DNA of 63,408 nucleotides, filler included, from Chiloscyllium plagiosum (GCF_004010195.1; 7 parts of 7 records of this genome joined end to end with filler, not necessarily neighbours in it), one strand, 5' to 3'. Positions 3,595 through 22,190 are shown, numbered from the whole stretch's first letter. The notes: generated from the sequence alone by a model not told the origin. Program-made: numbers and translations.

Positions 3595-3975
3595 TAAGGC
3601 AGATGTTTCATCCCCTGACTCCGGGACATTAGGTGCTTTGGATCCTCCTGTGAGGCGCTGCTGTGAGGTGTCTTCTGGAATTTATTTGGTTCCTTTCCTG
3701 CTGCTTCCGGTTGCTGGTTCCGGTTGTTCGTTTTAGTGGCCGGTATATTGGGTCACGGTCTGTGTGTTTGTTGATGGAGTCCGTGGATGAGTGCTTTGCT
3801 TCTAGAGATTCTCTGGCTGTACCTCTGTTTAGCTTGTCCAATGATCATTGTGCTGTCCCAGTTGAATTTGTGGTCCCTGTCATCTGTTCATATGGCCACT
3901 TGGGACAGTTGGTCATGGTGTTTTGTGGCTACTTGGTGTTCATGGATGTGGATTGCAATTGTCTGTCTCGATGGT
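3595..3975 (-). mobile_element. Penelope-like element 3' fragment (GIY-YIG C-terminus)
   Basis: ARESLEAKHSSTDSINKH..DPIYRPL, homologous to 21765-22190. Confidence 0.7.
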
Positions 3976-4417
3976 GTTTCATGCAGTCTTTGCATTTTTA
4001 CAAGATTCCTCCTTGTAAAAACTGCATGAAACATTCGAGAATTTCTACACTCATCATACGCACACACACGCCCATGCACACACACACAGACATACGCATA
4101 TTTACAACCGTAGTATTCCGTGCCTCAGAGCAAGAAATAATTCACTTAGTCACATTCGTCCACTCTGTTCCTATGGCCCTCCACATTTGCCATGCACTTT
4201 CTTTTTTTCAAAACTGCTACCGGGAACTATACAAAGCCAGGTCCAGAGGGCAACTATTAATGTTAAATTGTTAACGCCTCTTCTGCAAGAAGCTGGCGTT
4301 GTGCTGGCATTGTCATAGACTGTGCAATCCACTGAGTTCAGGATAAAGCTCTGGGATCATGGGTCAGCACCCACTAGGGCAGCTGGTAGACCTTGCACTC
4401 GCTTAGTAAATTGACTT

Positions 4418-5232
4418 AAATCACATAACACCAGGTTATAGTCCAACAGGTTTATTTGGAAGCACTAGCTTTCAGAGCGCTGCTCCTTCATCAGGTAACT
4501 ACTGGGGCAGCATCATAAGACACAGACTTTATACCAAAAGATCGCAGTGTCATGCACTTAAAATGACATTTTGAACAATCCTAGATTACTGTTCATTCTT
4601 TACCTTTTAGAACGGTTTGCAGGTCTCAGTTCATTAATATATAAGTCCCAGAACTTCTTTTAACTCACATTCTCGAGGTAACTTAAGGTTTTTTAAAAAC
4701 AGATGACAGCTCAACTCAGGCAATGTATTAAGGGTGTGAGGTTAGAGTCTATCTGTATCCCAGTCTTGAGTCAGACCGGTTCTATTTCCAAAGTAGGAAT
4801 TTATAAAATGTTATATGGATTAACTACCAGCATTGACTGCCTGCAGGTTGTGTGCTGTTGAGAAAAAATATAATTGTATCTGCAAATAAAATTCTGCAAA
4901 TGCAAATTCACCCCACTGACTTATATAATCTCTGTGGGTGTGAGAGTGTGTGTGTGAGTGCATGTGAGAGAGTGTGAATGTTGAGACCTGCAAACCGTTC
5001 TAAAAGGTAAAGAATTAACAATAATCTAGGTTTGTTCAACATATCATTTTAATTGCATGACACTGCGATCTTTTGCTATAAATTCTGTGTCATATGATCC
5101 AGCCCCACTAGTTACCTGATAACGGAGGAGCGCTCTGAAAGCTAATGCTTCCAAGTAAACCTGTTGGACTATAACATGGTGTTGTGTGATTTTCAACATT
5201 GTCCACTCCAGTCCAACACTGGCATATCCAAA
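4418..5232. mobile_element. Non-autonomous Penelope-like repeat with long inverted arms
   Basis: 4418-4630 is mirrored at 4985-5190, and the arms carry a CTGATGA..GAAA motif. The same terminal sequence recurs at 17657-17858, 32975-33100, 52105-52270 and 60199-60616. Confidence 0.65.
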
Positions 5233-7039
5233 TCAATAGTAAATAGATGTTGTAAAGATGGTTTCTTTGGAGCTGTGGAGACTTGTATTCTGTGGGAGTC
5301 AATGTAAACCAAAGATAGGTTTGTTATGAAGCTGTAGAGATGTACTGTACCTTTAAGAGAGTTGAAAAACTAGTAAGGACTAACAGAGCACAGAAAGTCC
5401 TGAACAAGGTAACAATGTAACACTTGGTCAACACAAATAGCAGTAGCTGGGTTGCCATGAAATGAAAATAAATTCAAATTTGGCCAATCAGTTTAAATTA
5501 TGCCCCGAGATACAAAAATCCAATCAAATTTTTATTAAGTATTTTGATAATATTTAAACTGTTGAAACAATCTGATGTTTAAATTAATAAAAAGAAAATG
5601 TTCTCATTGTTGAAGAAATTATTTAGTCTGAGACTTGTTTCAAGAACTTTTATTTTTCGTGAATTCAAAGAGACGCAGTGACAGTCTTCATTGTCTCACA
5701 GCACTCTCCCAAGCCGAACAGTCTGCCTATATTTATACAATAATTCAAACAACTTTACTTGTTTTTACTTAGATTAAATACGATAAATAATGACAGAGAA
5801 AAACAAAGTGGAGGTACTCCCTTTGTTCCCAAACTTGCTCAAGGACAGAGAGACTAATGAGCTTAAGATACACCCTCTATATTTCATCAAACTATAATTA
5901 CACAATCACTGTGATCTCCAGCAGTATTCTCTCATGACAGCTGCAAGCCTGAGAGCCAAGTCACCTTAAACTTTGGTCAAGTATCCCATCATGCAACAGT
6001 ATGTCAAATTCTTACTACTTCCACACTCATAGTAAAGACCTGTTTTTCTTATCGAAAAGGTCCTTTACTGTTTCTTTATTCTTTGATGTGGGCGTCTTCA
6101 TCCGCCTCTGAATTTAAAGGTTTGCTGGGCTATTTCAGAGACCAGTTAAGAATTAGAAAAATTAGAAAATGCATTTTGAGTCACAAGTAATAAAGAGAGA
6201 TGCTTTCCAGTTGGGATTTAATGATTCAAATTAAATTCCACCTGCTGCAGAACTGGGATTTAAATCCATGCCCTCTACATTGCAAATGCAACAATATAGC
6301 TATTACAGCTTATTAAGATTTATGTTCAGCCATTTAGGACTACCAAGCAGGTTCAGTTCAATCCCATGGATTTTATTGCAGTTTTCCACAGTGTGGGCCT
6401 TTGGGCAACCACCATCTCCTCAATAACAGCCTTGTCTCCTCCTGCTCACCTTCGTGCACGTTCAAATGACAAGCATTTCTTCTTCAACGATATAGGAGCT
6501 GGGAGAAAAGCTGAGTTTACTCACTTGAGAGTGAAATTATTGCCAACAGTTTCCTGAGTCCATCCATTCACACTGCAGAAATGACATTTGGAAATAGAAT
6601 AAATTAAACCAGCAGCAGCACATGAGAAGAAATTATGCTCTCTCCATGCAAGGGAGAGTCAATGTAGGGCACATTTTCTTTCCTTCTTCAATATCCTTGC
6701 GTTGTAGAGACATCGAGTACAGCAGAGGTCCTTTGGTCCATCGAATCTGCACAAATCTATCTACAATAATCAGGCTTTCCACCTCCTGGCTCATGGCTTA
6801 GAATGTTATTGCATTCCAAGAGTTCATTCACGGACCTGTTTAAAGATTGTTAACCATTTCTATTGCATTCCCGGGCAGTGTATCCCAGACACCTACCACT
6901 CTCTGGATAAAAGAAAAACGCTCATCAAATTCTCTCTAAACGTCCTGCCCTCCACCTTAAAATTACGTCCTCCTTCATTATTGATTCTCCAAATGAGAGG
7001 AACAGTTACTCCCTATCCACCCTGTCGATGTCCCTTATA

Positions 7040-8681
7040 ATTAAATGGAAGAGGGCGGCCTATGTAAAGATGAGGCATGAAGGTTCAATTGGGGCGATTG
7101 AGAGTTATAAGATAGCCAGGAAGGATCTGAAGAGAGAGCTAAGAACAGCAAGTAAGGGACATGAAAAGTCCTTAGTTGGTAGGATTAGGGAAAACCCTAA
7201 GGCTTTCTATAGGTATGTCAGGAATAAAAGAATGACTAGGGTAGGAATAGGTCCAGTCAAGGATAGTAGTGGGAAGTTGCATGTGGAGGCTGAAGAGATT
7301 GGGGAGACACTGAAAGAATACTTTTCGTCAGTATTCAATCAGGAACAGGACATTATTGTCAATGTGAATACTGAGTCACAATTAAGCAGAATGGATGGCG
7401 TTGAGGTATGTAGAGAAGAGGTGTTGGAAATCCTGGAAAAGGTGAAAATAGATAAGTCCCCTGAGCCTGATGGCATTTATCCTAGGATTCTCTGGGAAGC
7501 AAGGAAGGAGATTGCAGAGCCATTGGCCTTGAATTTTATNNNNNNNNNNNNNNNNNNNNNNNNNNNNNNNNNNNNNNNNNNNNNNNNNNNNNNNNNNNNN
7601 NNNNNNNNNNNNNNNNNNNNNNNNNNNNNNNNNNNNNNNNNNNNNNNNNNNNNNNNNNNNNNNNNNNNNNNNNNNNNNNNNNNTGGAGTGCCGTCACTAG
7701 CGGTGTTCCGCAAGGATCTGTTTTGGGACCATTGCTGTTTGTCATTTTTATAAATGACCTGGAGGAGGGGTTAGAAGGTTGAGTGAGCAAGTTTGCGGAT
7801 GATATGAAAGTCGGTGGAGTTGTTGACAGTGATGAAGGATATGTCAGGTTACAGCGGGATATAGATAAGCTGCAGAGCTGGGCAGAAAGGTGGTAAATGG
7901 AGTTCAATGTAGGTAAGTGTGAAGTGATTCACTTTGGTAAGAGTAACAAGAAGGTGGGGTACTGGGCTAATGGTCGGATACTTGGTAGTGTGGATGAGCA
8001 GGGGGATCTTGGTGTCCATGTACACAGATCTCTGAAAGTTGCCACCCAGGTAAATAGTGCAGTGAAGAAGGCATATGGCGTACTGGCTTTTATTGGTAGA
8101 GGAATCGAGTTTCGGAGTCCTGAGGTCATGTTGCAGTTGTATAAAACTCTGGTGCGGCGCATCTGGAGTATTGTGTGCAGTTTTGGTCGCCATACTATAG
8201 GAAGGATGTGGAGGCACTGGAACGGGTGCAGAGGAGGTTTGCCAGGATGTTGCCTGGTATGGTAGGAAGATCGTATGAGGAAAGGCTGAGGTACTTGGGG
8301 CTGTTTTCATTGGCGAAAAGAAGGTTTAGGGGTGACTTGATAGAGGTGTACAAGATGATTAGGAGTTTAGATAGGGTTGACTATAAGAATCTTTTTCCAC
8401 GTATGAAGTCAGCTATTACGAGGGGGCATAGCTTTAAATTAAGGGGTGGTAGATATAGGACAGATGTTAGGGGTAGATTCTCTACTCAGCGAGTCGTGAG
8501 TTCATGGAATGCTCTGCCAGTAGCAGTGGTGGACTTTCCCTCTTTATTGGCATTTAAACGGGCATTGGATAGGCATATGGAGGATAGTGGGCTAGTGTAG
8601 GTTAGGTGGGCTTGGATCGGCAAAACATCGAGGGCCAAAGGGCCTGTACTGCGTTGTATTTGTCTATGTTCTATGTTCTAT
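7040..8681 (+). mobile_element. CR1 LINE, degenerate ORF2 (RT) with (TTCTATG)n tail
   Basis: [42 protein letters not shown] and LERVQRRF motifs, with stops and frameshifts. Confidence 0.9.
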
Positions 8682-8774
8682 AATCTCATACACCAATCAG
8701 ATGCACCTTCAGGCTCTTCCGCTGTATAAAATGGGGTAATACAACGAACATCAATTGTAATTTACTATAATTAT

Positions 8775-9336
8775 ATTTATAAACCTCTGTAAGGTCACCC
8801 CTGAGCCTCCGACGCTCCAGGGAAAACAGCCCTACCCTATTCAACCTCTCCCTGTAGCTCAACTCCTCCAACCCTGCCAACATCCTTCTAAATCTTTTCT
8901 GAACCTTTTCAAGTTTCACAATTTATTTCCGATAGGAAAGAGACCAGAACTGCAATATTCCAAAAGTGATTTAACCAATGTCCTGTACAGACGCAACATG
9001 ACCTCCCAACTCCTGTAGTCAATACACTGACCAATAAAGGAAAGCATAGCAAATGCCTTCTTCACTATCCTATCTACCTGCGACTCCACTTCCAAAGAGC
9101 TATGAACCTGTACTCCAAGGTCACTTTGTTCAGCAATACTCCCCAGGACTTTACCATTAAGTGTAAAAGTCATGCTCTGATTTGCTATTCCAAAATGCAG
9201 CTCCTCACATTTATCTGAATTAAACTCCATCTGCCACTCCTGAGTCAATTGGCCTATCTGATCAAATTCCCCTTGTACTCTGAGGTAACCTTCTTCGCTG
9301 TCCACTACACCTCCAATTATGGTGTCATCTGCAAAC
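8775..9336 (-). mobile_element. CR1 LINE fragment
   Basis: WQMEFNSDKCEELHFG..DLGVQVHSSL..LEKVQKRF..RRLRGDLTEVYK. Confidence 0.88.
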
Positions 9337-11199: not shown

Positions 11200-12200
11200 A
11201 CTTTACGACATAGAGTTGTAGAGATCTACAGCACAACGGTCCCTTCAGCCCATTGAATCGGTGCTGATCAAAAACAACCACAAAACTATTCTATTGTATT
11301 TTCCAGCATTTGGTTCATATCCTTGCATGCCTCGGCATTGCAAATCTACACCTAACTGCGTCTTAAATAGAATAAGGGGTTCTGCCTCCACCATCCTTAC
11401 AGGCAGCGAGTTTGAGATTCGCACTGAGTGAAAATAAATTTCCTCACATCATCTCTGTACCTCCTACTCCTTACATCTCTCTCTCTCTCTCGCTCTCTCT
11501 CTTTCACACACTCACACAGAGTTGATATTCAAATCAGTCATGCACCATGTCCCACGTCCCCCAAGTTATTTTACTGTAAGGAAAACAACCATAGTTTGTC
11601 CAACCTTTCTGCATAACTGGCATTCTCCAGCCCGGAGTAATTCCACTCTGCACCACTCCATTGTAATCACATTCCTCCGATAATATAGATTGCAGGACTG
11701 CACACAGTACTGTAGGTGTACCCATTTTATACAGTTTCAGCATAATCTCCTTGCTCTTAAACTCTGTATCTTGGCTAATAAAGGAAAGCATCCCATATGC
11801 CTTCTTAACCCCTTTAACTACCTGACGCACGCTCTTAAGGGGTCAGTGTACATGCACCCCACTCTTAATATTCGGTGCTTCCACGGTTCTGCAATTGTTC
11901 GTGTATTCCCTTGTCTGTTTGTCCTGCCCAAGTGCATCAGCTCAGACTTATCTGGATTGAATTCCATTTTCCCACTGGTTAGTCCATCTGGCCAGTCTAT
12001 CATTATCTTCCTGTAATCTCAGGTGGTCCCCTTCACGGTTCAGCAGCCCCATAACCTTTCGTGTCACCTGCAAACAACCCTCCTACATTCAAGTCTAAAT
12101 CATTTATATATACCTTAAACAGTAAGGGCCCCCAAAACTGGTTATTGCAGAGCCCCACTTGACCCAGATTTCCAATCACAAACAGTCAATCATTACCTTC
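11200..12200 (-). mobile_element. Degenerate CR1 LINE fragment
   Basis: MEFNPDKSELMHLGR and VKKAYGMLSFISQDTEFKSKEIMLKLYK. Confidence 0.8.
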
Positions 12201-13359: not shown

Positions 13360-13699
13360 GTTTCATGATATCTGATTGAACATGATGTCACTTAATGCGT
13401 TGAAAAATTGAAAGGTTCATCAGTTGTCCTTAAAGTTCCACCTTTTTCACTGATGTCTTTTAGGGCAGGATATCCTCATCCTTACCCAGTCTGACTTTAG
13501 ATGCACACGAATGTGTGAAACCCCCAAAGCCAGTGGAAACAGACTGATACCTCTCCGTACCAGAGGTGAGAAAAATAAGCTTTGAGTAACCGTTTCCATT
13601 GCGTCACATGCTGTCAGTGTTATGTTGCGTTGTAACGCCCACTTGCCTGTATAGTGGGCAATCTGGATGTATTTCCACCCTATTTGCAGAGCATCAAGA

Positions 13700-13742
13700 A
13701 TGGTTTCCAGTGCAGTGTTCTGTATCCTGAGTCTTGGCTTTG
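13700..13742 (+). CDS. Leader (signal peptide) exon of the NKp30-like receptor
   Basis: ATG at 13700 reads MVSSAVFCILSLGF and ends at a phase-1 donor G|GTAAGA. An upstream acceptor-like TTGCAG at 13684-13689 suggests a 5'UTR exon. Confidence 0.75.
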
Positions 13743-16700
13743 GTAAGAAACTTCATTGATTCACTTGTTGGTATTAACTGGAGCGCCCAGGCAAACTTTG
13801 AAATGCACAAGGTTTGTGCTTGCTGTGGCATGGGACATTTCATATTAGCAATTTCTCACTGGGTATACTTTTACTTAGTCAGTTTTGCTATTTCCTTTTA
13901 ATAGATGTGGGGGCATGAACGACTGTCCAAGTATGCATTCTTTTGTGAACGTGCATGCGTTCACAGGTCAAGTCCAGTAATCAGTTCTACTCCGCAGCAC
14001 ACCCAAATTGGGAAGTGAAAAAAGAATAATGATTTCGCTTCTTTATTTCAGTTTCCGAACCAATTGTTCCCCACTGTTGTGACAGCATACATGTAAGAAA
14101 AAGTACTGCAGCACCGATGTTGATGTCTGTAACTATGGTACAGCGTGAGACTTCAAGTTAAGACAAACTATCGGCTGCTTTAAACATTGAACTAAGTAGC
14201 ATAACATGGGATATGCCCGAAAGGAAAATAGAGCAAGGTTTATCATGGGTTTCTCAAAACTTCGTAAAAGTTCGCTCGGTTATTAGGGGGGAACCAAAAT
14301 TTGTTGATACATTTGGAAGCGAACAGGCGAGATATAGTCTTGCTGGTTTTAAAACGGTTCTTTGAAGACGTGATTTGGCACAAAAATCATATTTTGGAGA
14401 CCTACATTTGGTGTAATAGACATTGGCAATTGACATTGGCATCACGAGATGTTAAGAACAAAAAGTAATGTTTATTACAACCCGAAAGATGATAATATCC
14501 TCATAATTGGCGCACTTTCAAAACAAAAAAAATAACCTACTGTATCTTCATCCATATCATCACGGAGGGAAAAATACGGGTTGGCAATGAAAGGATTGTA
14601 CTTTTGAAATCCATTATCCAATGTTCAGTTAAACTGGGTGAATTCAAAGCTTAATATCTCCGAATGTGAATTCGCCCAATGGCGCGATTATCTTCCATAA
14701 TCTTCATCAAAGTATTTATACCTGATTTATAAATCCATCACAAAACGATAACATCATTGAATCACAGTTCATCCTCTACCACCACAGTGGGAGAGCAATT
14801 TTAGTGTGTCAATTTCTGTAAGAGCTTTGGACAAGTTCACGTGGCCGTTCCGTTAACATTCCAGTAATTACCTTTAGGAGCAATATTTCACGCAGGCGCG
14901 TAAATACGGCGTTAAGTGTCTGACTTCGGTGTGAAATGCTGTTTGCTCTTTTACAGCAATGAGCGCTAAGAACATCAAAGTTCTTCAAAGCCCGGCATCT
15001 ATGAATGTCACCGAGGGGAACACAGCCGCTATGCACTGTATGTACAAAGGATCTAATGGGCCAAGTGTCTTCAGGTGGTTCAGGGACAGGAAAGGAGGAA
15101 CCGAGCTTTGCAACAGCACAGCACAATACAGAGGCCGGGTCATTGGGCCAGACAGGGAGAAAATCCAGGGAATGACGGGCGCCTGGATTCAACTCACAAA
15201 GGTGACATTGAGCGACCAGGCGACCTATTATTGTAAAGTGGAATTTGTCACAAACAATGAATATTATGGAGAAGGATCAACACTTACTGTGACAGGTGAG
15301 CATGCTGCACACTGTTATCTTTATCAATGAAATAGTAACATTATCGAATTGAGGAGCCTTTTAGCTCACGGTTATTTTTCTTAGACTAACAACGGTCCGA
15401 TAGACACAACTTCACAGTTGAAAACATTAGGAACCATACAGTATTATGATCGGCGAATTTTTCTTTTGTTTTTCCGACCACGCGTCTTAAATGTTGTTCT
15501 GTAGTCTGACAACTCGAGAAATTATTTGATTCCATCCAGGCTACAAAAAAACCATTGCACCAACAACTCTAGGTTGGAAGGTAGAAGGGAGAGAGAGAGA
15601 GAGACACTTTGGGAAGTTACAATCACCAGGGAAGCGTGATGACACGTCTCCGGGTCCCAATGCAGCTCATCCCGTCTTAAAAGAGATGGTTACTTCGGCA
15701 GTTGGTACATTGGTGTTAACCTTGGAGAAAGTGAGGTCTGCAGATGCTGGAGATCAGAGTCAAAAAGTGTGGCGCTGGAAAAGCACAGTCGGTCAGGCAG
15801 TATCCGAGGAGCAGGAGAATCGATGTTCCCAGCATAGGCTCCTCATTCCTGATGAAATCTGAATTCAATTTAAAAAAAATCTGGTCCAATGACGACCATG
15901 AAACAATTGTCGATTGTTGGTTCACGAATCTCCTTTTGGGGAAGGAAACTTCCATCCTTACTTGGTTTGGCCTACATGTGACTCCAGACACACAGTGATG
16001 TGTTTAATTCTTAATTGATTTATGGACAGTTAGGGATGGGACACTAAACTAGCCAGAGGCGCACACATCCTGTGGTGATAAAAAAAAAATGCATTGTGTT
16101 CTATGGAATGCTGCTCAATACATCGCCGGTATAATTTTAAGATGAGGGGAGAAAGATTAAAAAGGGGCGTGAGGGGCAACTTTTTCCACACAGATCATAG
16201 CGGAATGTCTGCCAGAGGAAGAGGAAGGTGCAGATACAGTTGCAACATTGCAAATACGTTTGGATAAGTAAGTGACTAGGAATTGTCGAGAGGGATATGG
16301 GCCAAAGGCTGACAACGTGGGAGCAGTTTACTTTGGGAAAACTGGTGGGCATGGGTGAGTTGGACCGAAGGGTCTGTTTCCATACTGGGTGACTCGATGA
16401 GAGCAGGTTAGGCGGTAAAGGAAATAAATAATATTTGTTTGCTTCCAGCAGCGATGACCAGAAATCACATAGCCATCGTTTCCAAGGGTAGACGGACAGC
16501 CCTGTTTATAACGGTAGCGGCATTTCTCCTGACCTTGCTCTCAGCGATAATTATCGTGATCTCCTGCCGGAACGAAACGAAAGGTACACACCGTTTCATT
16601 GGATAATCTCAGTCCCTCCACGCTGCTAGTCATGTCGCTTGCATTTTCATATATCCTTGCTCGGACGAGATGTTAATAGTCATATGTTTGGAACTCCCAG

Positions 16701-19700
16701 CTCTCCCATGGTGGAAATTCAGATCGTGGACGTAAAAGGGCCGGGTTCCTTGTATTCGGGCGCGTATTATATTTGTTTTGAACCGGTGTCCAGGTTTCAA
16801 ACCTGAGGTGTCCTCAGTGGTTCAGAAAGGGAAGTAAAATCAGGGAAACTGAGCGTATAGGAGGAGGAGTCGGCCACTCATGGTGGAGCCCGCTGCTCCA
16901 TCCAATGCCATCGGGGCTGATCCTTTATCTCAGCGCCATCCTTGTGCTTTAAGCTTCTGGTTCCCCTCCTCTCAGCCCTACAGGTGCTGCTCTGTAAAGT
17001 GAGACTGCCAACCCTCGTTCCAAGCACCGCTGTCGTTCCTCTTCGGGAAAAGAAAATGTTACTTTTGTCACATTTCGAATTTTTAACCCCGATTAACAAC
17101 GATAGCTAACTGTAACTGCTTCCTGCAATTCGTCTCCAAGTTTCGGGCCCGACTGCCTTCATTGCCCCTCGCACCCTGCGTCTCACAGCAACTCCGTCAG
17201 TCAATGCTCCAATCAGATCGACTCTCCCACCCAACTTGGCACACACATTACCGTTTAACTATCATAGCAAGGACGAAATCAAAGCATGTGTGGATGGAAC
17301 GCAATACAAATTAATTATGATTTCCTGAGCTGAATACAAACATCTCCCAACCCCGTTTACTTTGCCTCTCCTTCCGAAGCTAAAAAAGCAACAACTACCT
17401 CAGACTTATTGCAGTCGAATTTTATGATGTGTGATAATGCACGCGTTTAATAGAATAGTTGAGGCGGAGATGAGTTAAAGGCGCAAATTCGGAGCAGGGG
17501 AATTAAAGGGTGGCAATTAAAGCTTGGAAATGTTGAGCTGCGATTTCATGCCATTGACGTTTCTGATATTCCTTTTTTTCTCCCTGTACCAGAGACATTC
17601 CACAGAAGATCATCGCACAGAGCTGAAGATCAGGTGCATGACATCTCAGAATAACTGATTTGGAGATGCCGGTGTTGGACTGGGGTGTAAACAGTTAAAA
17701 ATCACACAACGCCAGGTTATAGTCCAACAGGTTTAATTGGAAGCACTAGCTTTCGGAGCGCTGCTCCTTCATCAGGACAACCCACAATCACCTGATGTGA
17801 AACCAGTGCTTCCAATTAAACCTGTTGGACTATAACCTGGTGTTGTGTGATTTTTAACTCAGAATAACCGAGCTTGGTTGTATCTCTTCAGCGCTGTGAT
17901 ACCTGTTGGCTAATAGCTGATGTGTATAAGCTGCAAATCCAAAACGATCATTCAAACGTTAGCTTGAGCGCTCATAGATTTATTAAGCAGGCAGCAAAAG
18001 TAAACCGATCAGACCCTACAGTGAGTAGGTAATGCTCATAAACAGAGTTGGGGATTGAAATGCAACACAGGCCTGAAGTCTGTATTTCATCCTAACATCA
18101 ATTCAAATCACATTTCTCTTGAATTATTCATTGGGTGGTTTAGGCCAGTATTTATTGCTCACTCATATTTGCCCTTGAGAAGGTGGTGATGAGCTACGTT
18201 CCTGAACTGCTGCAGCTATTGTGGTAAAATCATAGAACCATACAGTCCAGAGAGGAGCTTGGGCTCATCAAGACTCCACTGGCAAAAACTACTCTCAATC
18301 CACACAAGTCCCACTTTCCAGCACTTGGCTCACCAATGTTATAACATTTCAAGTGCTTATTTAGAAAGGCTATGAGGATTCCTGCATCAATTACTCTCCC
18401 AGGCATTTCATTCCAGATTCCTAACACCGTTTGGGTAAATTTTGACTTCCACAAATCATTTCTAAATCTCCTGCCTTTTACCTTAATATTATAGCCCTTT
18501 ATTGCTAACCTTTCAAATAAAGAGACTAGTTGCTTTCTATCCGCCCTGTCCACGTGCCTGATAATCTTTAACACATCAATAAGGTCCTCTCTCAGCCTGC
18601 ACTTATCTAGCCGAGTTTATTCAGTTTCCCTTTGTAACCAAACTGCTCCATCTTAGACAACATCTTAGTGATTCTCCTCAACGATTACAATGACATCATT
18701 TCTATAGTGACCCAGAACTGTACACTGTCTCCCAACCAAATTCTTGTATAGCTCCAACATATCCTCCCTGTTCTTATAATCTATGGCACGACTGATGTAA
18801 ATGCACTGTCTACTTTCTTAACTACCCTAATAACCCGTCCTACCACCTTCAGGGATCTGTGGCCAAGAACCACAACATTCATGTGAGCTTCCCAGTGTCC
18901 TTCCATTCAATGAGTACTCCCTTGTCTTTTTATTTGTTCTGATTTTCATCAACTCACATTTATCCGGGTTAAATTCCATCTGGTGCTGATCTACCCACTT
19001 GACCAATCTGTCTATACCCTCCCGCAAGCTGGGATAGTCTTCCTCACTGTCAATCAACCTGTCAACCCGTGTGTCATCTGCAAACTTACTTGTCTTCCGC
19101 CCCCATCCCTACATATTTCTTCAATTTTAATTGTATGCATCATGAGCAATAAAGGACTCAGTAATGAATCCTTTGGTATACCGCTAGCGACAGGCCTCCA
19201 ACTGCACAAGCAGATTTCTTCCACCATCCTGTAGCTCCTATCACTAAGCTAATTCTCGATCTAACTTGCTAAGTCACTGTGAATCCTATGTACCTTTACG
19301 TTCTCTATCTGTTTTCCATCTAGTACCATGCCAAACGCTTTGCTAAAATCCGTACAAATGATACCAACTAAACTATCATCATCTATACACCTGGTCACCT
19401 CCTTGAAAATTTCGATCAAATTTGTTAGGGAGCACCTCCCTCTGAGAAAGCCATGATGACTATTCTTGATCAAGCTTTGTCTGTCTGAGTGGAATTTCGT
19501 TTCCTCTTTTAGAATTGCCTTCAAAAGATTCCTTACCACTGATCAGGGAGAGCCATGTGGTTGTTTGAGAGGCTGTTAGGGAGGGAGTTTCAGGACTTCA
19601 ACGTAACATCATCTATAACTTATACTATTCCCTCACTTTGAGCAGTATCATTCTGTGCAGATATCCAACTCTTGTCCAAGAGTATCAATGGCCTGAGCAA

Positions 19701-21607
19701 CATCATAATTAATAAAATGCCTTCCTTCCATACCATTGCTTTCCGATCAGAAATACTCACATAGTTCATTACCTTATGAATCATTTCGGTCTTGTTGCAC
19801 ATCACTGCCATTTCATCACATCACACAATTGATTATAAGTTTAGTTTTTATTATGTTCATTTGAAAAAGAAGCAATTACCTCACGTTTTACAAACGGGAA
19901 TTAAAAGCTAATATTTACCTAGATTCTTCTTCAAGTTACTTTCTGATTTTGAACTATTAACGAATTGCAGCTTCTTTAAATTTAGGAATATATTAACACA
20001 CCCCTAATTATAGTTCCCTAGTACTCAGATGGTCACTTTAAATAAAACCCTGCAACGCCCAACTTCAGATTCAATGGCCTCTATAGCACTATCAGATTCT
20101 GATGCATTGGACTCAGAGTGAATTCCGTCCTTGGTGATCCTTTCATTCCAGTTTTGAAAGTTACTGTGGCTTGTTTTCGCTGGTCTAGCCAATGAGTACT
20201 TAAGTTATGTGTAGAACCATTTCAGTATCTCATCAGAGAGCAGCAAAAAGAACAGCCTTGAGTCCCCTGGCCTCAAGGTCTTTTGGCATGCCGTGATAGT
20301 GTCCCAACCTCGGTACTAGGAGGCCTAAGTTCAGGTCCCTCTTCCTTCAGAGGTATATATTAACATCTCTGAGCAGATTAATTTGAAAATTGCTAAGCCT
20401 CACTCTGTTGTCATTTATTCCTTCTTCAAATAACCTTATTAACATCTGCATATATTTAGACTTAAAACATTATCAACAGTAAAACTTAGTCATAAATCAA
20501 CTTAGAGCTATTCAAATGAAACATTTTACATATTATTGTCATTTAGTGTTATTGTCAGTTAATACACTAATATCAAAGAGGTATTTTGCCTACGATGATG
20601 GTCAGTTAAGAAGTAAACTCTTTTTCAAGTTAGTAATCGAGTTTACTTAATAGTGCTATAATCATGCTTGTCGACAATTTCTCAACTGTAGGGTGTCAAT
20701 TCTTGACTGAAAATGCTGACTAAAAACAATTTGCAGAGGAAACAGAAGTGTTGATAAAAAAATAATCGAACAATAGATAAATATATATCCATGCTTTCAG
20801 AGTAGGTGCATCTCCTTTTCTAAGCATTTTTCTCTACTTGATATATTCAGTAATGTATTCTATTTCTGTTCAACCAGGGAAGTGAAGAAGATAAGGTTCA
20901 ATATTGTGCACTAGACTTTAAAGAAACAGAGCGAACATCTACAGTGAAAGACAAGGTAGCATGCAGCTTGTTGAAAGATTTATATTCATGTTAACTAACT
21001 TGATAATGCAGAGTTGTACATGTACATTATGCAATAAGGAAGCACTTCATGCAAATTTCGTATCTCATGGTACATTGGTCTATCCAGTTATCCTTCATAA
21101 TATTAATACTGATATTAGAAATCACACTGAAAAATCCATCAGAGCCATTACATGGACTGTTTAAAACCGTTATTACCCCTTTATATATTAATATGATTCT
21201 AAGATACTGAATTACTAAATTGCCCATGATGTAACCCATTGTTGGCTGATACATACAGTTCTACTATGGAACATAGAGATCAAGTTCACTGACCAACTAA
21301 TTTGACGAGGTAAATGCATCGTTAGTGGTCACTGATTAATTGCAAGTTATCTATTTTCAAGTTTCAATTCTAAACACTGACAGTAAGCATGAGGGAAAAA
21401 ATATATACCAAAAAGCAACCTGACAGGAAACATGCCATAGTGTCTTCAATTTATTTTTAAAAACCCACATTGAAGTGTAGCTCAAGTAACACATATTGTC
21501 GAAATAATATGTGATCTTAATTGTGTCCATGTTTTACTCTCCTCAAACAGACAAATGCAGAGGATAATTTACAATACTGCGCATTAAAATTCAGTGAGAA
21601 AAAGTGA
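13700..21607 (+). CDS. NKp30/NCR3-like single VJ-type Ig domain receptor with two ITIMs; spliced CDS join(13700..13742,14957..15295,16449..16583,17593..17633,20878..20955,21551..21607), 230 aa
   Basis: Six exons with GT-AG boundaries and compatible phases (1,1,1,0,0) total 693 nt without an internal stop. Order: signal peptide MVSSAVFCILSLGF, V domain, stalk+TM, then three cytoplasmic exons. Confidence 0.85.
14957..15295 (+). CDS. VJ-type Ig V-set exon, NKp30-like
   Basis: TTTTACAG acceptor and G|GTGAG donor. B-strand Cys (MHC), WFRD, YRGRV, DQATYYC and the J-like G-strand YYGEGSTLTVT all lie in one exon with no RSS. Confidence 0.92.
16449..16583 (+). CDS. Stalk + transmembrane exon of the NKp30-like receptor
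   Basis: TTCCAG acceptor and G|GTACAC donor. Encodes AAMTRNHIAIVSKGRRT-ALFITVAAFLLTLLSAIIIVISC-RNETK; the hydrophobic span has no charged residue. Confidence 0.85.
17593..17633 (+). CDS. Cytoplasmic exon 1 of the NKp30-like receptor
   Basis: Polypyrimidine tract then ACCAG acceptor; encodes ETFHRRSSHRAEDQ; donor CAG|GTGCAT. It converts phase 1 to phase 0, as needed to read the ITIM exons. Confidence 0.7.
18230..19540 (-). mobile_element. Degenerate CR1 LINE fragment in intron 4 of the NKp30-like gene
   Basis: HGFLRGRCSLTNLIEIF..DFSKAF and MEFNPDKCE. Confidence 0.85.
20878..20955 (+). CDS. Cytoplasmic exon with ITIM 1 (VQYCAL)
   Basis: ACCAG acceptor; encodes GSEEDKVQYCALDFKETERTSTVKDK; donor AAG|GTAGC; phase 0-0. 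Confidence 0.82.
21551..21607 (+). CDS. Terminal exon with ITIM 2 (LQYCAL)
   Basis: Pyrimidine tract then AAACAG acceptor; encodes TNAEDNLQYCALKFSEKK with TGA at 21605-21607. Confidence 0.82.
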   Translation, partial: TNAEDNLQYCALKFSEKK

Positions 21608-21764
21608 AAACCAGTATGTCTGAAGAAAAGAACAAGTGAAGGTTAAGCGTCAATTTGTGGAATTATGGCAGAAAATTGGAATTCACTCAACATTTTTATC
21701 TCCAATGTTATAAAATTATTGTATATTTTAAAGGTGTGCAATTCAATGTATCTATCTATCTATT

Positions 21765-22190
21765 CAAAGTTTGTGCGAAGATTTGTAGCTCGGGTGCTCG
21801 TTGTTGAGGTTCTGTTCGCCGAGCTGGAAGTTTTTGTTGCAAACGTTTCGTCCCCTGGCTAGGCGACATCATCAGTGCTTGAGAGCGTCCTGCGAAGCGC
21901 TTCTTTGATGTTTCCTCCGGTGTTTATAGTGGTCTGTCCCTGCCGCTTCCGGTTGTCAGTTTCAGCTGTCCGCTGTAGTGGTTGGTATATTGGGTCCAGG
22001 TCGATGTGTTTGTTGATGGAGTTTGTGGATGAATGCCATGCCTCTAGGAATTCCCTGGCTGTTCTCTGTCTGGCTTGCCCTATAATGGTAGTGTTGTCCC
22101 AGTCGAATTCATTTTGCTGGTTGCCTGCGTGTGTGGCTACTAAGGATAGCTGGTCGTGTCGTTTCGTGGCCAGTTGATGTTCATGTATGC
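21765..22190 (-). mobile_element. Penelope-like element 3' end (GIY-YIG tail + 3'UTR)
   Basis: Minus strand reads HEHQLATKRHD..EFDWDNTTII..REFLEAWHSSTNSINKHIDLDPIY, followed by a hammerhead motif. Confidence 0.78.
21838..21878 (-). ncRNA. Minimal type I hammerhead ribozyme motif (Penelope-associated)
   Basis: GCA-CUGAUGA-U-GUCGCCU AGCC AGGGGAC-GAAA-CG-UU-UGC: conserved cores, stem I GCA/UGC, stem II, and palindromic ACGU in place of stem III. Confidence 0.7.

What the first reader, a model, noticed from the sequence alone, without database searches (positions are those of the whole stretch)
13700..21607. Complete inhibitory NKp30/NCR3-like receptor: germline-joined VJ domain, uncharged TM, two ITIMs
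Seen: six exons splice in phase to MVSSAVFCILSLGF-AMSAKNIKVLQSPASMNVTEGNTAAMHCMYKGSNGPSVFRWFRDRKGGTELCNSTAQYRGRVIGPDREKIQGMTGAWIQLTKVTLSDQATYYCKVEFVTNNEYYGEGSTLTVT-AAMTRNHIAIVSKGRRTALFITVAAFLLTLLSAIIIVISCRNETK-ETFHRRSSHRAEDQ-GSEEDKVQYCALDFKETERTSTVKDK-TNAEDNLQYCALKFSEKK*. The ORF track shows only the V exon. Established: the WFRD..E.xNxT..(F/Y)RGR..A..I..V...D...Y.C.VE..GxGxxLxV pattern is that of NKp30. Mammalian NKp30 is activating, uses a TM arginine to pair with CD3zeta/FcRgamma, has no ITIM and binds B7-H6. VxYxxL/LxYxxL are ITIMs that recruit SHP-1/2. Inference: this is an inhibitory member of a paired NKp30-family system in sharks, a candidate inhibitory NK receptor built on a non-rearranging antigen-receptor-like domain. 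I cannot tell from the sequence whether it has already been described.
Basis: partly seen in the sequence, partly recalled or inferred. Interest (0 to 1): 0.88.

Follow-up and report, generated by a model that had tools for sequence, protein, structure and literature searches.

The report
Shark NKp30-family receptor with two ITIMs
This is an intact six-exon shark gene for a small cell-surface immune receptor of the NKp30 (NCR3) family whose tail carries two inhibitory tyrosine motifs; similar genes are already annotated in other sharks, so it is a further member of a known family.

Summary
Six exons (13700-21607, + strand) have canonical GT-AG borders and matching phases and give a 230-codon frame. 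They encode a split leader, one VJ-type V-set Ig domain (Pfam 1.3e-14), a short stalk, a 23-residue hydrophobic TM, and a tail with VQYCAL and LQYCAL 26 residues apart. One spliced contig in a public run joins exon 3, 40 unlaid letters (exon 4's length), exon 5 and exon 6.

The nearest proteins are shark RefSeq models with the same architecture, some named "NCR3-like". The nearest named non-shark relatives are frog NCR3. Family profiles rank human NKp30 as the best single domain in the PDB. A four-sequence subtype profile cannot separate NKp30 from SIRP D1. A bamboo-shark relative has 86-88% identical V domains, a TM arginine and a short tail, which fits a paired system.

Shark NCR3 genes were published in 2021; that paper was not readable here. 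Inhibitory signalling is inferred. This scan's unchecked notes report other NKp30-like genes in the same genome.

The parts
13700..13742 (+). Exon 1: start codon and most of the signal peptide (split leader); ends in phase 1; donor G|gtaaga
   Evidence: 64% identical over 14 residues to the leaders of the Carcharodon orthologues P0003/P0157 and 62% over 13 residues to Scyliorhinus P0158 (E 0.3-1.3, weak on its own)
14957..15295 (+). Exon 2: end of the leader plus a complete VJ-type V-set Ig domain (Cys27, Trp40, Cys92 of the exon translation; N-glycosylation sequons NVT and NST)
   Evidence: Pfam PF07686 E 1.3e-14; 87% identical to P0001; invariant columns
15265..15294 (+). J-like G strand YGEGSTLTVT, inside the same exon as the V part (germline-joined)
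   Evidence: G104, G106, V111 nearly invariant across 28 family members
16449..16583 (+). Exon 3: 16-residue stalk ending in KGRR, then the transmembrane segment, then CRNETK
   Evidence: 63% identical over 30 residues to the Heterodontus NCR3-like protein P0005 (E 1e-5); covered by the spliced contig of X6
16496..16564 (+). Hydrophobic TM core TALFITVAAFLLTLLSAIIIVIS (23 residues, no charged residue)
   Evidence: best 19-residue Kyte-Doolittle mean 2.89
17593..17633 (+). Exon 4: 41 nt of cytoplasmic sequence, phase 1 to 0
   Evidence: supported only by length: 40 unlaid letters in the X6 contig between the exon 3 and exon 5 pieces
20878..20955 (+). Exon 5: cytoplasmic, carries the first ITIM
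   Evidence: tblastn E 3e-8 (P0157) to 1e-3; covered by the X6 contig
20896..20913 (+). ITIM 1: VQYCAL
   Evidence: VQYC(A/T)L or VQYSAL is conserved in P0003, P0005, P0157, P0158
20956..20994 (+). Possible alternative C-terminus if intron 5 is retained: VACSLLKDLYSC then a stop, giving a one-ITIM isoform
   Evidence: my reading of the frame; the window's VACSLLKD matches the read-through end VACGFLKD of Carcharodon isoform X2, P0157; X8 contig record 21 runs from 20880 into the intron to 21246
21551..21607 (+). Exon 6 coding part: second ITIM and the stop codon
   Evidence: tblastn E 0.003-0.011; X6 contig; aligns without gaps to exon 5 over about 60 nt
21569..21586 (+). ITIM 2: LQYCAL, its tyrosine 26 residues after that of ITIM 1
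   Evidence: and exon arithmetic
21608..21734 (+). 3' untranslated sequence, at least to 21734, where the X6 contig leaves the genome sequence next to AAAG|gtgtgc

Best explanation
The region holds an intact, transcribed gene of the cartilaginous-fish NCR3 (NKp30) family. It encodes a type I membrane protein of 230 residues. The parts are a split leader, one non-rearranging VJ-type V domain, a short stalk, one TM helix without charge in its core, and a tail of about 58 residues. Two duplicated exons in the tail each supply an ITIM (VQYCAL, LQYCAL), with the tyrosines 26 residues apart. Shown: the gene structure, the family relationship, conservation of the layout in four shark orders, and splicing of exons 3 to 6. 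Inferred from established knowledge of ITIM receptors: the V domain binds a cell-surface ligand, possibly a B7H6-like molecule as for NKp30. Src-family kinases then phosphorylate the two tyrosines, and the tandem SH2 domains of SHP-1/SHP-2 dock on the pair and damp activating signals in the lymphocyte that carries it. It probably works beside activating-type paralogues that have near-identical V domains, a basic TM residue and a short tail.
For: Gene model. V-set domain. RNA-type contig joining exon 3, 40 letters, exon 5, and exon 6 plus 127 nt of 3'UTR. A phmmer search of 1.84 billion representatives gave 375 hits at E<=1e-3. Of the 30 listed hits whose names I looked up, 22 are cartilaginous-fish proteins; they include two nurse-shark deposits named NCR3 (QTT61898.1, QTT61904.1), RefSeq 'NCR3-like' models and a Callorhinchus UniRef entry named NCR3. 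Seven are amphibian, of which five are named NCR3 or NCR3-like (Xenopus, Bombina). One has no organism on record. Orthologues P0005 (Heterodontus), P0157 (Carcharodon) and P0158 (Scyliorhinus) share the leader, V, uncharged TM and VQYCTL tail. In a tree of 79 V domains the window's V sits in a 6-row clade with them (SH-aLRT 98). PDB profile searches give human NKp30 versus the best SIRP D1 as 101.9 vs 78.0 bits (28 sequences), 92.6 vs 78.2 (18 chondrichthyan sequences only) and 80.7 vs 73.8 (11-sequence clade). The printed alignment shows the shared W-F-R-D, N-x-T-x-(Y/F)-R-G-R, Y-x-C-x-V-E and G-x-G-T-x-L-x-V positions. Activating-type counterpart: P0001. Of 29 family proteins tabulated, 9 combine a TM core with no charged residue with an ITIM, and 6 combine R/K in the TM with a tail of 29 residues or fewer and no ITIM.
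Against: No functional data exist for any shark NCR3 protein as far as I could see. The subtype-only profile (4 sequences) scores SIRP beta-1 D1 (48.9 bits) slightly above NKp30 (45.6), and NCBI names two of the relatives 'SIRP beta-1-like'. Single-sequence phmmer against the PDB lists only antibody, TCR and JAM chains in its top 60. The outer TM boundary carries KGRR, which the orthologues lack. YxxL also fits an endocytosis signal. The RNA evidence is one contig in one run whose library type is not on record. Exon 4's letters were not seen. The single-cell RNA run X9 gave reads only on repeats. The contig leaves the genome at 21734, so the 3' end is not understood. MHC linkage and ligand could not be tested.
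Confidence: 0.72

Rival explanations
1. It is a SIRP-like rather than an NKp30-like receptor: a shark relative of the signal-regulatory proteins, the classic ITIM/charged-TM paired family, that has lost its C1 domains.
For: The four-sequence subtype profile scores SIRP beta-1 and SIRP alpha D1 at 48.9-48.3 bits against 45.6-44.8 for NKp30. RefSeq names P0001, P0003 and P0157 'signal-regulatory protein beta-1-like'. SIRP D1 is the second-best single domain in every profile search.
Against: There is no C1-set exon. The V exon is followed directly by the stalk/TM exon here and in the annotated orthologues. The 3-bit difference is within noise. Wider profiles favour NKp30 by 7, 14 and 24 bits. None of the 30 named hits of the window's V was a SIRP of a bony vertebrate, while five were amphibian NCR3 or NCR3-like. 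The RefSeq names are automatic.
Confidence: 0.1
2. The tyrosine motifs do not inhibit. The tail serves internalisation (YxxL sorting signal) or another signalling mode, or the KGRR at the outer TM boundary lets the protein also couple to an acidic adaptor, so that it is dual or activating, as KIR2DL4 and NKp44 combine both features (recalled).
For: YCAL fits YxxPhi. KGRR directly precedes the hydrophobic core. In human NKp30 the adaptor-binding arginine is described as a TM residue (PMC5371597, passage read), and I recall it lying at the stalk/TM border (Memmer et al. 2016, not held).
Against: Both motifs have the full ITIM consensus including the -2 position. They are conserved as VQYC(A/T)L in four orders, and the pair is spaced 26 residues apart. 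The orthologues have no basic residues at the boundary. Activating-type relatives place R/K inside the core and have short tails.
Confidence: 0.12
3. It belongs to the CD28/PD-1 family of single-V co-receptors, some of which carry ITIM/ITSM tails.
For: Same overall layout (one V, stalk, TM, tyrosine tail). The language-model search with the orthologue P0005 lists TIGIT-like and BTLA clusters at 0.96, just below the NCR3-like cluster at 0.98.
Against: The CDR3-region motifs that define the CD28 family in PMC11599192 (PPP, E-I-P; passages read) are absent from KVEFVTNNEYYGEGS. No CD28-family chain appears in the listed PDB profile hits.
Confidence: 0.03

Closest known systems
Shark NCR3 (NKp30) family genes: nurse-shark deposits QTT61898.1 and QTT61904.1 (Kinlein et al. 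2021, Immunogenetics 73:333, not readable here) and RefSeq 'NCR3-like' models such as Heterodontus francisci XP_067865381.1
   Same: Split leader, single VJ exon, stalk/TM exon, and short cytoplasmic exons. XP_067865381.1 (P0005) is 59% identical in V and has an uncharged TM plus VQYSAL and VQYCTL. The window's V is 37% and 37% identical to the two nurse-shark deposits over the matched stretches.
   Different: This copy is a different species' gene; no protein closer than 87% turned up in the three word-index searches and one full scan I ran. Its stalk is short and ends in KGRR. Which of the eight published nurse-shark subtypes it matches could not be established.
Human NKp30 / NCR3 (PDB 6yjp, 3pv6, 3noi, 9fww)
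   Same: Single VJ-type V domain with shared W-F-R-D, N-x-T-x-(Y/F)-R-G-R, Y-x-C-x-V-E and G-x-G-T-x-L-x-V positions. It is the best single-domain PDB match of three family profiles.
   Different: Human NKp30 signals through a TM arginine paired with CD3zeta/FcRgamma (PMC5371597). Here the TM core is uncharged and the tail has two ITIMs. One review states that isoform NKp30c carries an ITIM (PMC12272517); I did not verify that.
Chiloscyllium plagiosum XP_043533794.1 ('SIRP beta-1-like', P0001)
   Same: Its two V domains are 88% and 86% identical to the window's V and form a clade with it (support 100). The stalk shares H-I-A-I.
   Different: It has two V domains, Arg inside the TM core, an 18-residue tail and no ITIM. 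That is an activating-type layout.
SIRP alpha / SIRP beta (paired ITIM / charged-TM receptors)
   Same: VJ-like D1 domain that scores close to NKp30 against the subtype profile. Same logic of inhibitory and activating partners with similar ectodomains.
   Different: SIRPs have two further C1 domains. None is encoded here.
Xenopus tropicalis NCR3 genes (e.g. XP_031756258.1; P0101 cluster)
   Same: Among the named hits, the nearest relatives outside cartilaginous fish (E 1e-8 to 1e-6). P0101 also ends in an ITIM-like LVYSTV with an uncharged TM.
   Different: About 31-36% identity. Longer CDR3-like loop and a GNGT/GKGT J motif.

Membership tests
NCR3 / NKp30 | One extracellular V-set Ig domain of VJ type, encoded with its J-like strand in a single exon after a split leader | tested here: met
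NCR3 / NKp30 | V-domain sequence closer to NKp30 than to other V families | tested here: inconclusive
   Met for profiles of 28, 18 and 11 family sequences (NKp30 ahead of SIRP D1 by 24, 14 and 7 bits). Not resolved for the 4-sequence ITIM subtype (SIRP ahead by 3 bits). No tree with mammalian NCR3 or SIRP could be built because no such sequences were available from the tools.
NCR3 / NKp30 | No constant-type Ig domain: V, then stalk, then a single TM | tested here: met
   orthologue models
NCR3 / NKp30 | Basic residue in the TM for CD3zeta/FcRgamma pairing (a feature of the mammalian protein, PMC5371597) | tested here: not met
   The TM core has no charged residue; KGRR lies just outside it. 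The nurse-shark deposit QTT61898.1 named NCR3 also lacks a charged core, so this feature does not define the family outside mammals.
NCR3 / NKp30 | Linkage to the MHC | not testable with these tools
   The window holds only this gene and repeats.
NCR3 / NKp30 | Binds B7H6 | not testable with these tools
   Needs a binding experiment.
ITIM-bearing inhibitory receptors (functional class) | At least one (S/I/V/L)xYxx(I/V/L) in the cytoplasmic tail, and no adaptor-pairing charge in the TM | tested here: met
   VQYCAL and LQYCAL, conserved in orthologues. Caveat: KGRR at the outer boundary.
ITIM-bearing inhibitory receptors (functional class) | Phosphotyrosine-dependent recruitment of SHP-1/SHP-2 or SHIP, and inhibition of activation | not testable with these tools
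   Needs an experiment.
SIRP | V domain followed by two C1-set domains | tested here: not met
   The V exon is followed by the stalk/TM exon. No Ig-like ORF lies in intron 2. The orthologues have the same layout.
CD28 family | CDR3-region proline motifs (PPP or E-I-P) as listed in PMC11599192 | tested here: not met
   Passages read; the sequence reads KVEFVTNNEYYGEGS.

The most novel reading that the evidence does not exclude
The ITIM form is the old, conserved arm of a paired NKp30 system. The same ITIM exon type (D-x-VQY-x-x-L) sits behind V domains of at least three shark V clades (P0005/P0157/P0158; P0037/P0042; P0044). Arg/Lys-TM short-tail partners recur in several clades, and this subtype's partner keeps 86-88% identical V domains. 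If so, ancestral NKp30 was an inhibitory or paired receptor and mammals kept only the activating arm. A conserved intron-5 read-through (VAC-x-x-LKD) may in addition toggle between one-ITIM and two-ITIM isoforms. Whether the 2021 shark NCR3 paper already says this I could not check.
Probability: 0.3. Interest if true: 0.55.

Novelty: new member of a known kind. Interest (0 to 1): 0.3.

Why it matters
NKp30 is the one NK-cell receptor with recognisable orthologues from sharks to humans, and its V domain is a non-rearranging relative of antigen-receptor V domains. A well-supported gene model with an inhibitory-type tail adds a concrete, testable locus to the question of whether paired inhibitory/activating recognition predates the mammalian activating-only NKp30. 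An activating-type relative with almost the same ectodomain strengthens that case. On its own it is an annotation gain for this genome rather than a discovery, because equivalent models are already public for three other shark species.

Tried and rejected
The single-sequence PDB search was uninformative: 7297 hits at E<=1, with multi-domain antibody constructs at the top. I moved to family profiles.

The word-index homology search with the V exon found nothing (5 candidates, none scored). Its length window of 62-196 aa excludes full-length relatives.

Searches with P0005 and P0001 each returned only 4 proteins, of 368 and 683 candidates. Neither returned a nurse-shark deposit of this subtype nor a protein of the window's own genome.

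The CD28-family reading was rejected on motifs. The pseudogene reading was rejected because all exons and splice sites are intact and a spliced contig exists.

No second V exon lies in the window (tblastn), and no other gene lies upstream.

Pfam gave nothing at E<=0.01 for six repeat-derived ORFs.

Literature searches:
- 'NKp30 + shark': 187 papers, 25 listed.
- 'NKp30 + ITIM + cartilaginous': 4.
- 'Shark NCR3 family genes': 4 citing papers.
- 'NS344823', an identifier I recalled from the 2021 abstract: 0.
- 'NKp30 + ITIM + Xenopus': 3.
- 'NCR3 + nurse shark': 3.
- 'NCR3 + ITIM + shark': 6.
- 'NKp30 + elasmobranch': 4.

For some searches I opened one listed paper each; for I opened three of the listed papers each; for the rest of those lists I saw titles and abstract starts only. 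In the passages I opened and the listings I saw, none describes ITIM-bearing shark NKp30. The key papers are not in the searchable library, so this is no proof that it is not in print. Supplements were closed and may hold the relevant alignments.

Full report
WHAT IS THERE. I read 13600-22190 and checked the exon borders by script. Six exons on the + strand are 13700-13742, 14957-15295, 16449-16583, 17593-17633, 20878-20955 and 21551-21607. Every intron begins GT and ends AG after a pyrimidine-rich tract. The phases chain without a break (0>1, 1>1, 1>1, 1>0, 0>0, 0>stop), and the lengths add up to 693 nt, i.e. 230 codons and a stop. The ORF list shows only the V exon as a long ORF (14959..15330). 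The rest of the window holds repeats and an N gap at 7540-7683. It has no second V exon (tblastn) and no other recognisable gene.

THE PARTS. Exon 1 holds the start codon and 14 1/3 codons of a hydrophobic leader; the leader ends in exon 2 (split leader). Exon 2 encodes a complete V-set Ig domain (Pfam PF07686, E 1.3e-14, 54.7 bits against a cut-off of 26). It has the two canonical cysteines, the tryptophan, D-x-A-x-Y-Y-C and a J-like YGEGSTLTVT in the same exon, so the domain is germline-joined. Exon 3 gives a 16-residue stalk ending in KGRR, then a 23-residue hydrophobic stretch TALFITVAAFLLTLLSAIIIVIS without charge, then CRNETK. Exons 4-6 give a tail of about 58 residues. Exons 5 and 6 each carry a motif that fits the ITIM consensus (S/I/V/L)xYxx(I/V/L): VQYCAL and LQYCAL. 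Their tyrosines are 26 residues apart. The two exons align without gaps from the acceptor over about 60 nt, which fits an exon duplication.

IS IT TRANSCRIBED AND SPLICED THIS WAY? The run search with the V exon found four runs of one study that hold 56-74% of its sampled words, with library type not on record. It also found two single-cell RNA runs of the same species label. I laid X5, X6, X8 and X9 on 15850-21849; the allowed 6000 letters cannot also reach exons 1-2.

In X6, a 585-letter contig (depth 19.4) lies on 16449-16581, 20875-20953 and 21549-21734. The borders differ from my exon borders only by letters that fit on either side (CAG at exon 4 / intron 4, AG at exon 5 / intron 5). So one contig supports TM exon > exon 4 (by length only) > ITIM exon 5 > ITIM exon 6.

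Twenty-seven further letters precede exon 3, where the V exon would be, outside the laid stretch. One hundred and twenty letters follow 21734 and do not match the window. The sequence there reads AAAG|gtgtgc, so a 3'UTR intron is possible, as is a haplotype difference next to the high-copy repeat that starts near 21764.

X5 and X8 show low-depth contigs over introns. One of them (X8, record 21) runs from 20880 into intron 5. X9 gave reads on repeats only. This is modest evidence: one contig, one run of unknown library type, with junctions 1-2 and 2-3 untested.

WHAT FAMILY? Single-sequence searches were of little use. The PDB phmmer list is filled with antibody constructs, and the word-index search found nothing within its length limits.

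The exhaustive phmmer scan of 1.84 billion representatives gave 375 hits at E<=1e-3 and 51 at E<=1e-10. I looked up names for 30 of the 150 listed. Twenty-two are cartilaginous-fish proteins. The best is Chiloscyllium plagiosum XP_043533794.1 (87%). Then come Carcharodon XP_041069025.1 (61%) and Heterodontus XP_067865381.1 'natural cytotoxicity triggering receptor 3-like' (59%). Two nurse-shark GenBank deposits are named NCR3 (QTT61898.1, QTT61904.1), and one Callorhinchus UniRef entry is named NCR3. Seven are amphibian, five of them named NCR3 or NCR3-like (Xenopus tropicalis, X. laevis, Bombina). One has no organism on record. None of the 30 is a SIRP, CD28-family or TCR protein of a bony vertebrate, although NCBI's automatic names for several shark models are 'SIRP beta-like', 'pIgR-like' or 'turtle-like'.

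PROFILE TEST AGAINST SOLVED STRUCTURES. A profile of 28 single-V family members ranks the four human NKp30 chains (6yjp, 3pv6, 3noi, 9fww) at 101.9-99.5 bits in one stretch. Only two four-V diabodies rank higher, and each of their domains scores at most 33 bits. The next single domain is SIRP beta-1 at 78.0 bits.

To avoid circularity I dropped the frog sequences. Eighteen chondrichthyan sequences give NKp30 92.6 against SIRP 78.2. The 11-sequence clade around the window's V gives 80.7 against 73.8. The four sequences of the ITIM subtype alone give SIRP beta-1 48.9 against NKp30 45.6, which is a tie. So the shark family as a whole is nearest to NKp30. The subtype alone is not resolved, and SIRP D1 is the runner-up throughout. 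The lack of any C1 exon argues against SIRP membership. I could not build a tree with mammalian NCR3 or SIRP because no tool supplied those sequences as usable records.

ORTHOLOGUES AND PARTNERS. In a quick ML tree of 79 V domains cut from the stored hits (118 columns; SH-aLRT only; unrooted in effect), the window's V groups with both V domains of the Chiloscyllium protein (support 100). It then groups with Carcharodon, Scyliorhinus and Heterodontus proteins in a 6-row clade (support 98). Batoid proteins come next (87), and the clade holding nurse-shark NCR3 QTT61898.1 after that (83).

The Heterodontus, Carcharodon and Scyliorhinus proteins share the leader, V, an uncharged TM and one or two VQYC(A/T)L or VQYSAL motifs. 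tblastn of these proteins onto the window recovers exons 1, 2, 3, 5 and 6 at the coordinates of my model. The layout is therefore conserved across four galeomorph orders.

The Chiloscyllium protein differs. It has two V domains (88% and 86% identical to the window's), an arginine inside the TM core, an 18-residue tail and no ITIM. That is an activating-type layout with nearly the same ectodomain.

In a crude table of 29 family proteins, 9 combine a TM core with no charged residue with an ITIM, and 6 combine R/K in the TM with a tail of 29 residues or fewer and no ITIM. The second group includes nurse-shark NCR3 QTT61904.1. ITIM exons of the same D-x-VQY type follow V domains of other clades as well (P0037, P0042, P0044). 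The partner in this genome was not examined, because I had only this window.

HOW IT MOST LIKELY WORKS. Shown: the gene structure, the family relationship, the conserved tail and partial splicing evidence. Inferred from what is established for ITIM receptors (recalled general knowledge, for example KIR, LILRB, SIRP alpha, PD-1): ligand binding by the V domain brings the tail near Src-family kinases. The two phosphotyrosines, spaced 26 residues apart, engage the tandem SH2 domains of SHP-1/SHP-2, which dephosphorylate proximal activating signals. The ligand is unknown. By analogy with NKp30 a B7H6-like molecule is the first candidate.

TWO DETAILS THAT DESERVE CARE. First, KGRR sits at the outer TM boundary, and the orthologues lack it. 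Human NKp30 uses a TM arginine for CD3zeta/FcRgamma (PMC5371597, passage read), and I recall that arginine lying at the stalk/TM border, so a dual role cannot be excluded. Second, if intron 5 is retained the frame reads VACSLLKDLYSC and stops. The Carcharodon X2 model ends in VACGFLKD..., and the Scyliorhinus model P0158 and the Heterodontus model P0044 end in TACG and IECGFAELQL. A one-ITIM isoform may therefore be real.

WHAT IS KNOWN. NKp30/NCR3 in sharks is established. PMC10751288 and PMC12227049 (passages read) treat NCR3 as a non-rearranging, MHC-linked VJ gene of elasmobranchs. PMC12227049 lists MT914154-914161 as nurse-shark NCR3 genes.

The primary papers are Flajnik et al. 2012, Ohta and Flajnik 2015 and Kinlein et al. 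[quoted passage not shown] None is held, and I saw them only as references. From recall of the 2021 abstract, it reports eight divergent subtypes and MHC linkage. Whether it discusses ITIM forms I do not know.

Eight full-text searches found no open paper describing an ITIM-bearing shark NKp30 in what I saw of them. For some lists that was titles and abstract starts only, with passages from one to three papers opened per list. Those searches also cannot see the key papers or any supplement.

Independently of print, RefSeq already carries orthologous models with this architecture. This scan's own unchecked notes report further NKp30-like genes 16, 25 and 38 kb downstream and 21 kb upstream. They also report paired clusters 0.9 Mb before and about 8 Mb beyond the window on the same piece. 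I did not test them.

VERDICT. The V-domain assignment is firm at family level and open at subtype level. The novelty is low: a new member of a known family, apparently missing from the protein sets I could search. Interest 0.3.

Noticed in passing
window 17693-17859 (also 4418-4628 / 4982-5192 and 5115-5250): A palindromic, MITE-like element with 60-nt arms 95% complementary sits in intron 4, 60 nt after exon 4. It is extremely abundant in the laid runs (summed contig depth about 1e6). Single-cell RNA reads end there with long T runs.
   Followed up: partly
window 21764-22190 and 3633-4274: A second high-copy repeat (188 nt at 76% identity between 3633-3820 and 21875-22062; summed depth about 4.6e5) starts about 160 nt after the stop codon. 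Its ORFs have no Pfam match at E<=0.01.
   Followed up: partly
window 21734/21735: The spliced X6 contig leaves the genome sequence here for 120 further letters. The site reads AAAG|gtgtgc. This is either a 3'UTR intron about 127 nt after the stop codon (which would make the mRNA a possible NMD target) or a haplotype difference beside the repeat.
   Followed up: no
window 20956-20994: Read through from exon 5, the intron encodes VACSLLKDLYSC then a stop. The same read-through peptide type ends RefSeq isoforms in Carcharodon (P0157) and, shorter, in Scyliorhinus (P0158) and Heterodontus (P0044). An X8 contig runs from exon 5 into the intron.
   Followed up: partly
window 20945 and 21686: Contigs of X6 and X8 read C for T at 20945; by my codon count this changes Val to Ala in the tail, outside the ITIM. 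X6 reads T for C at 21686 in the 3'UTR. These are probably alleles.
   Followed up: no
window 16484-16495: Four residues K-G-R-R directly precede the TM core. The Heterodontus, Carcharodon and Scyliorhinus orthologues have D/Q/H there instead. The stalk shares H-I-A-I with the Arg-TM protein of Chiloscyllium plagiosum.
   Followed up: partly
window 7028-9305, 11534-11830 and 18230-19539: Runs of ORFs on both strands resemble one another, for example 8175-8600 (+) and 8686-8919 (-). By eye they look like fragments of retroelement ORFs. The four I tested had no Pfam match at E<=0.01. An N gap lies at 7540-7683.
   Followed up: partly
stored proteins P0002, P0004, P0007 (Mobula, Heterodontus): Some cartilaginous-fish relatives string two to five NKp30-like VJ domains in one protein, up to 602 aa. 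This layout is unknown for mammalian NKp30.
   Followed up: no
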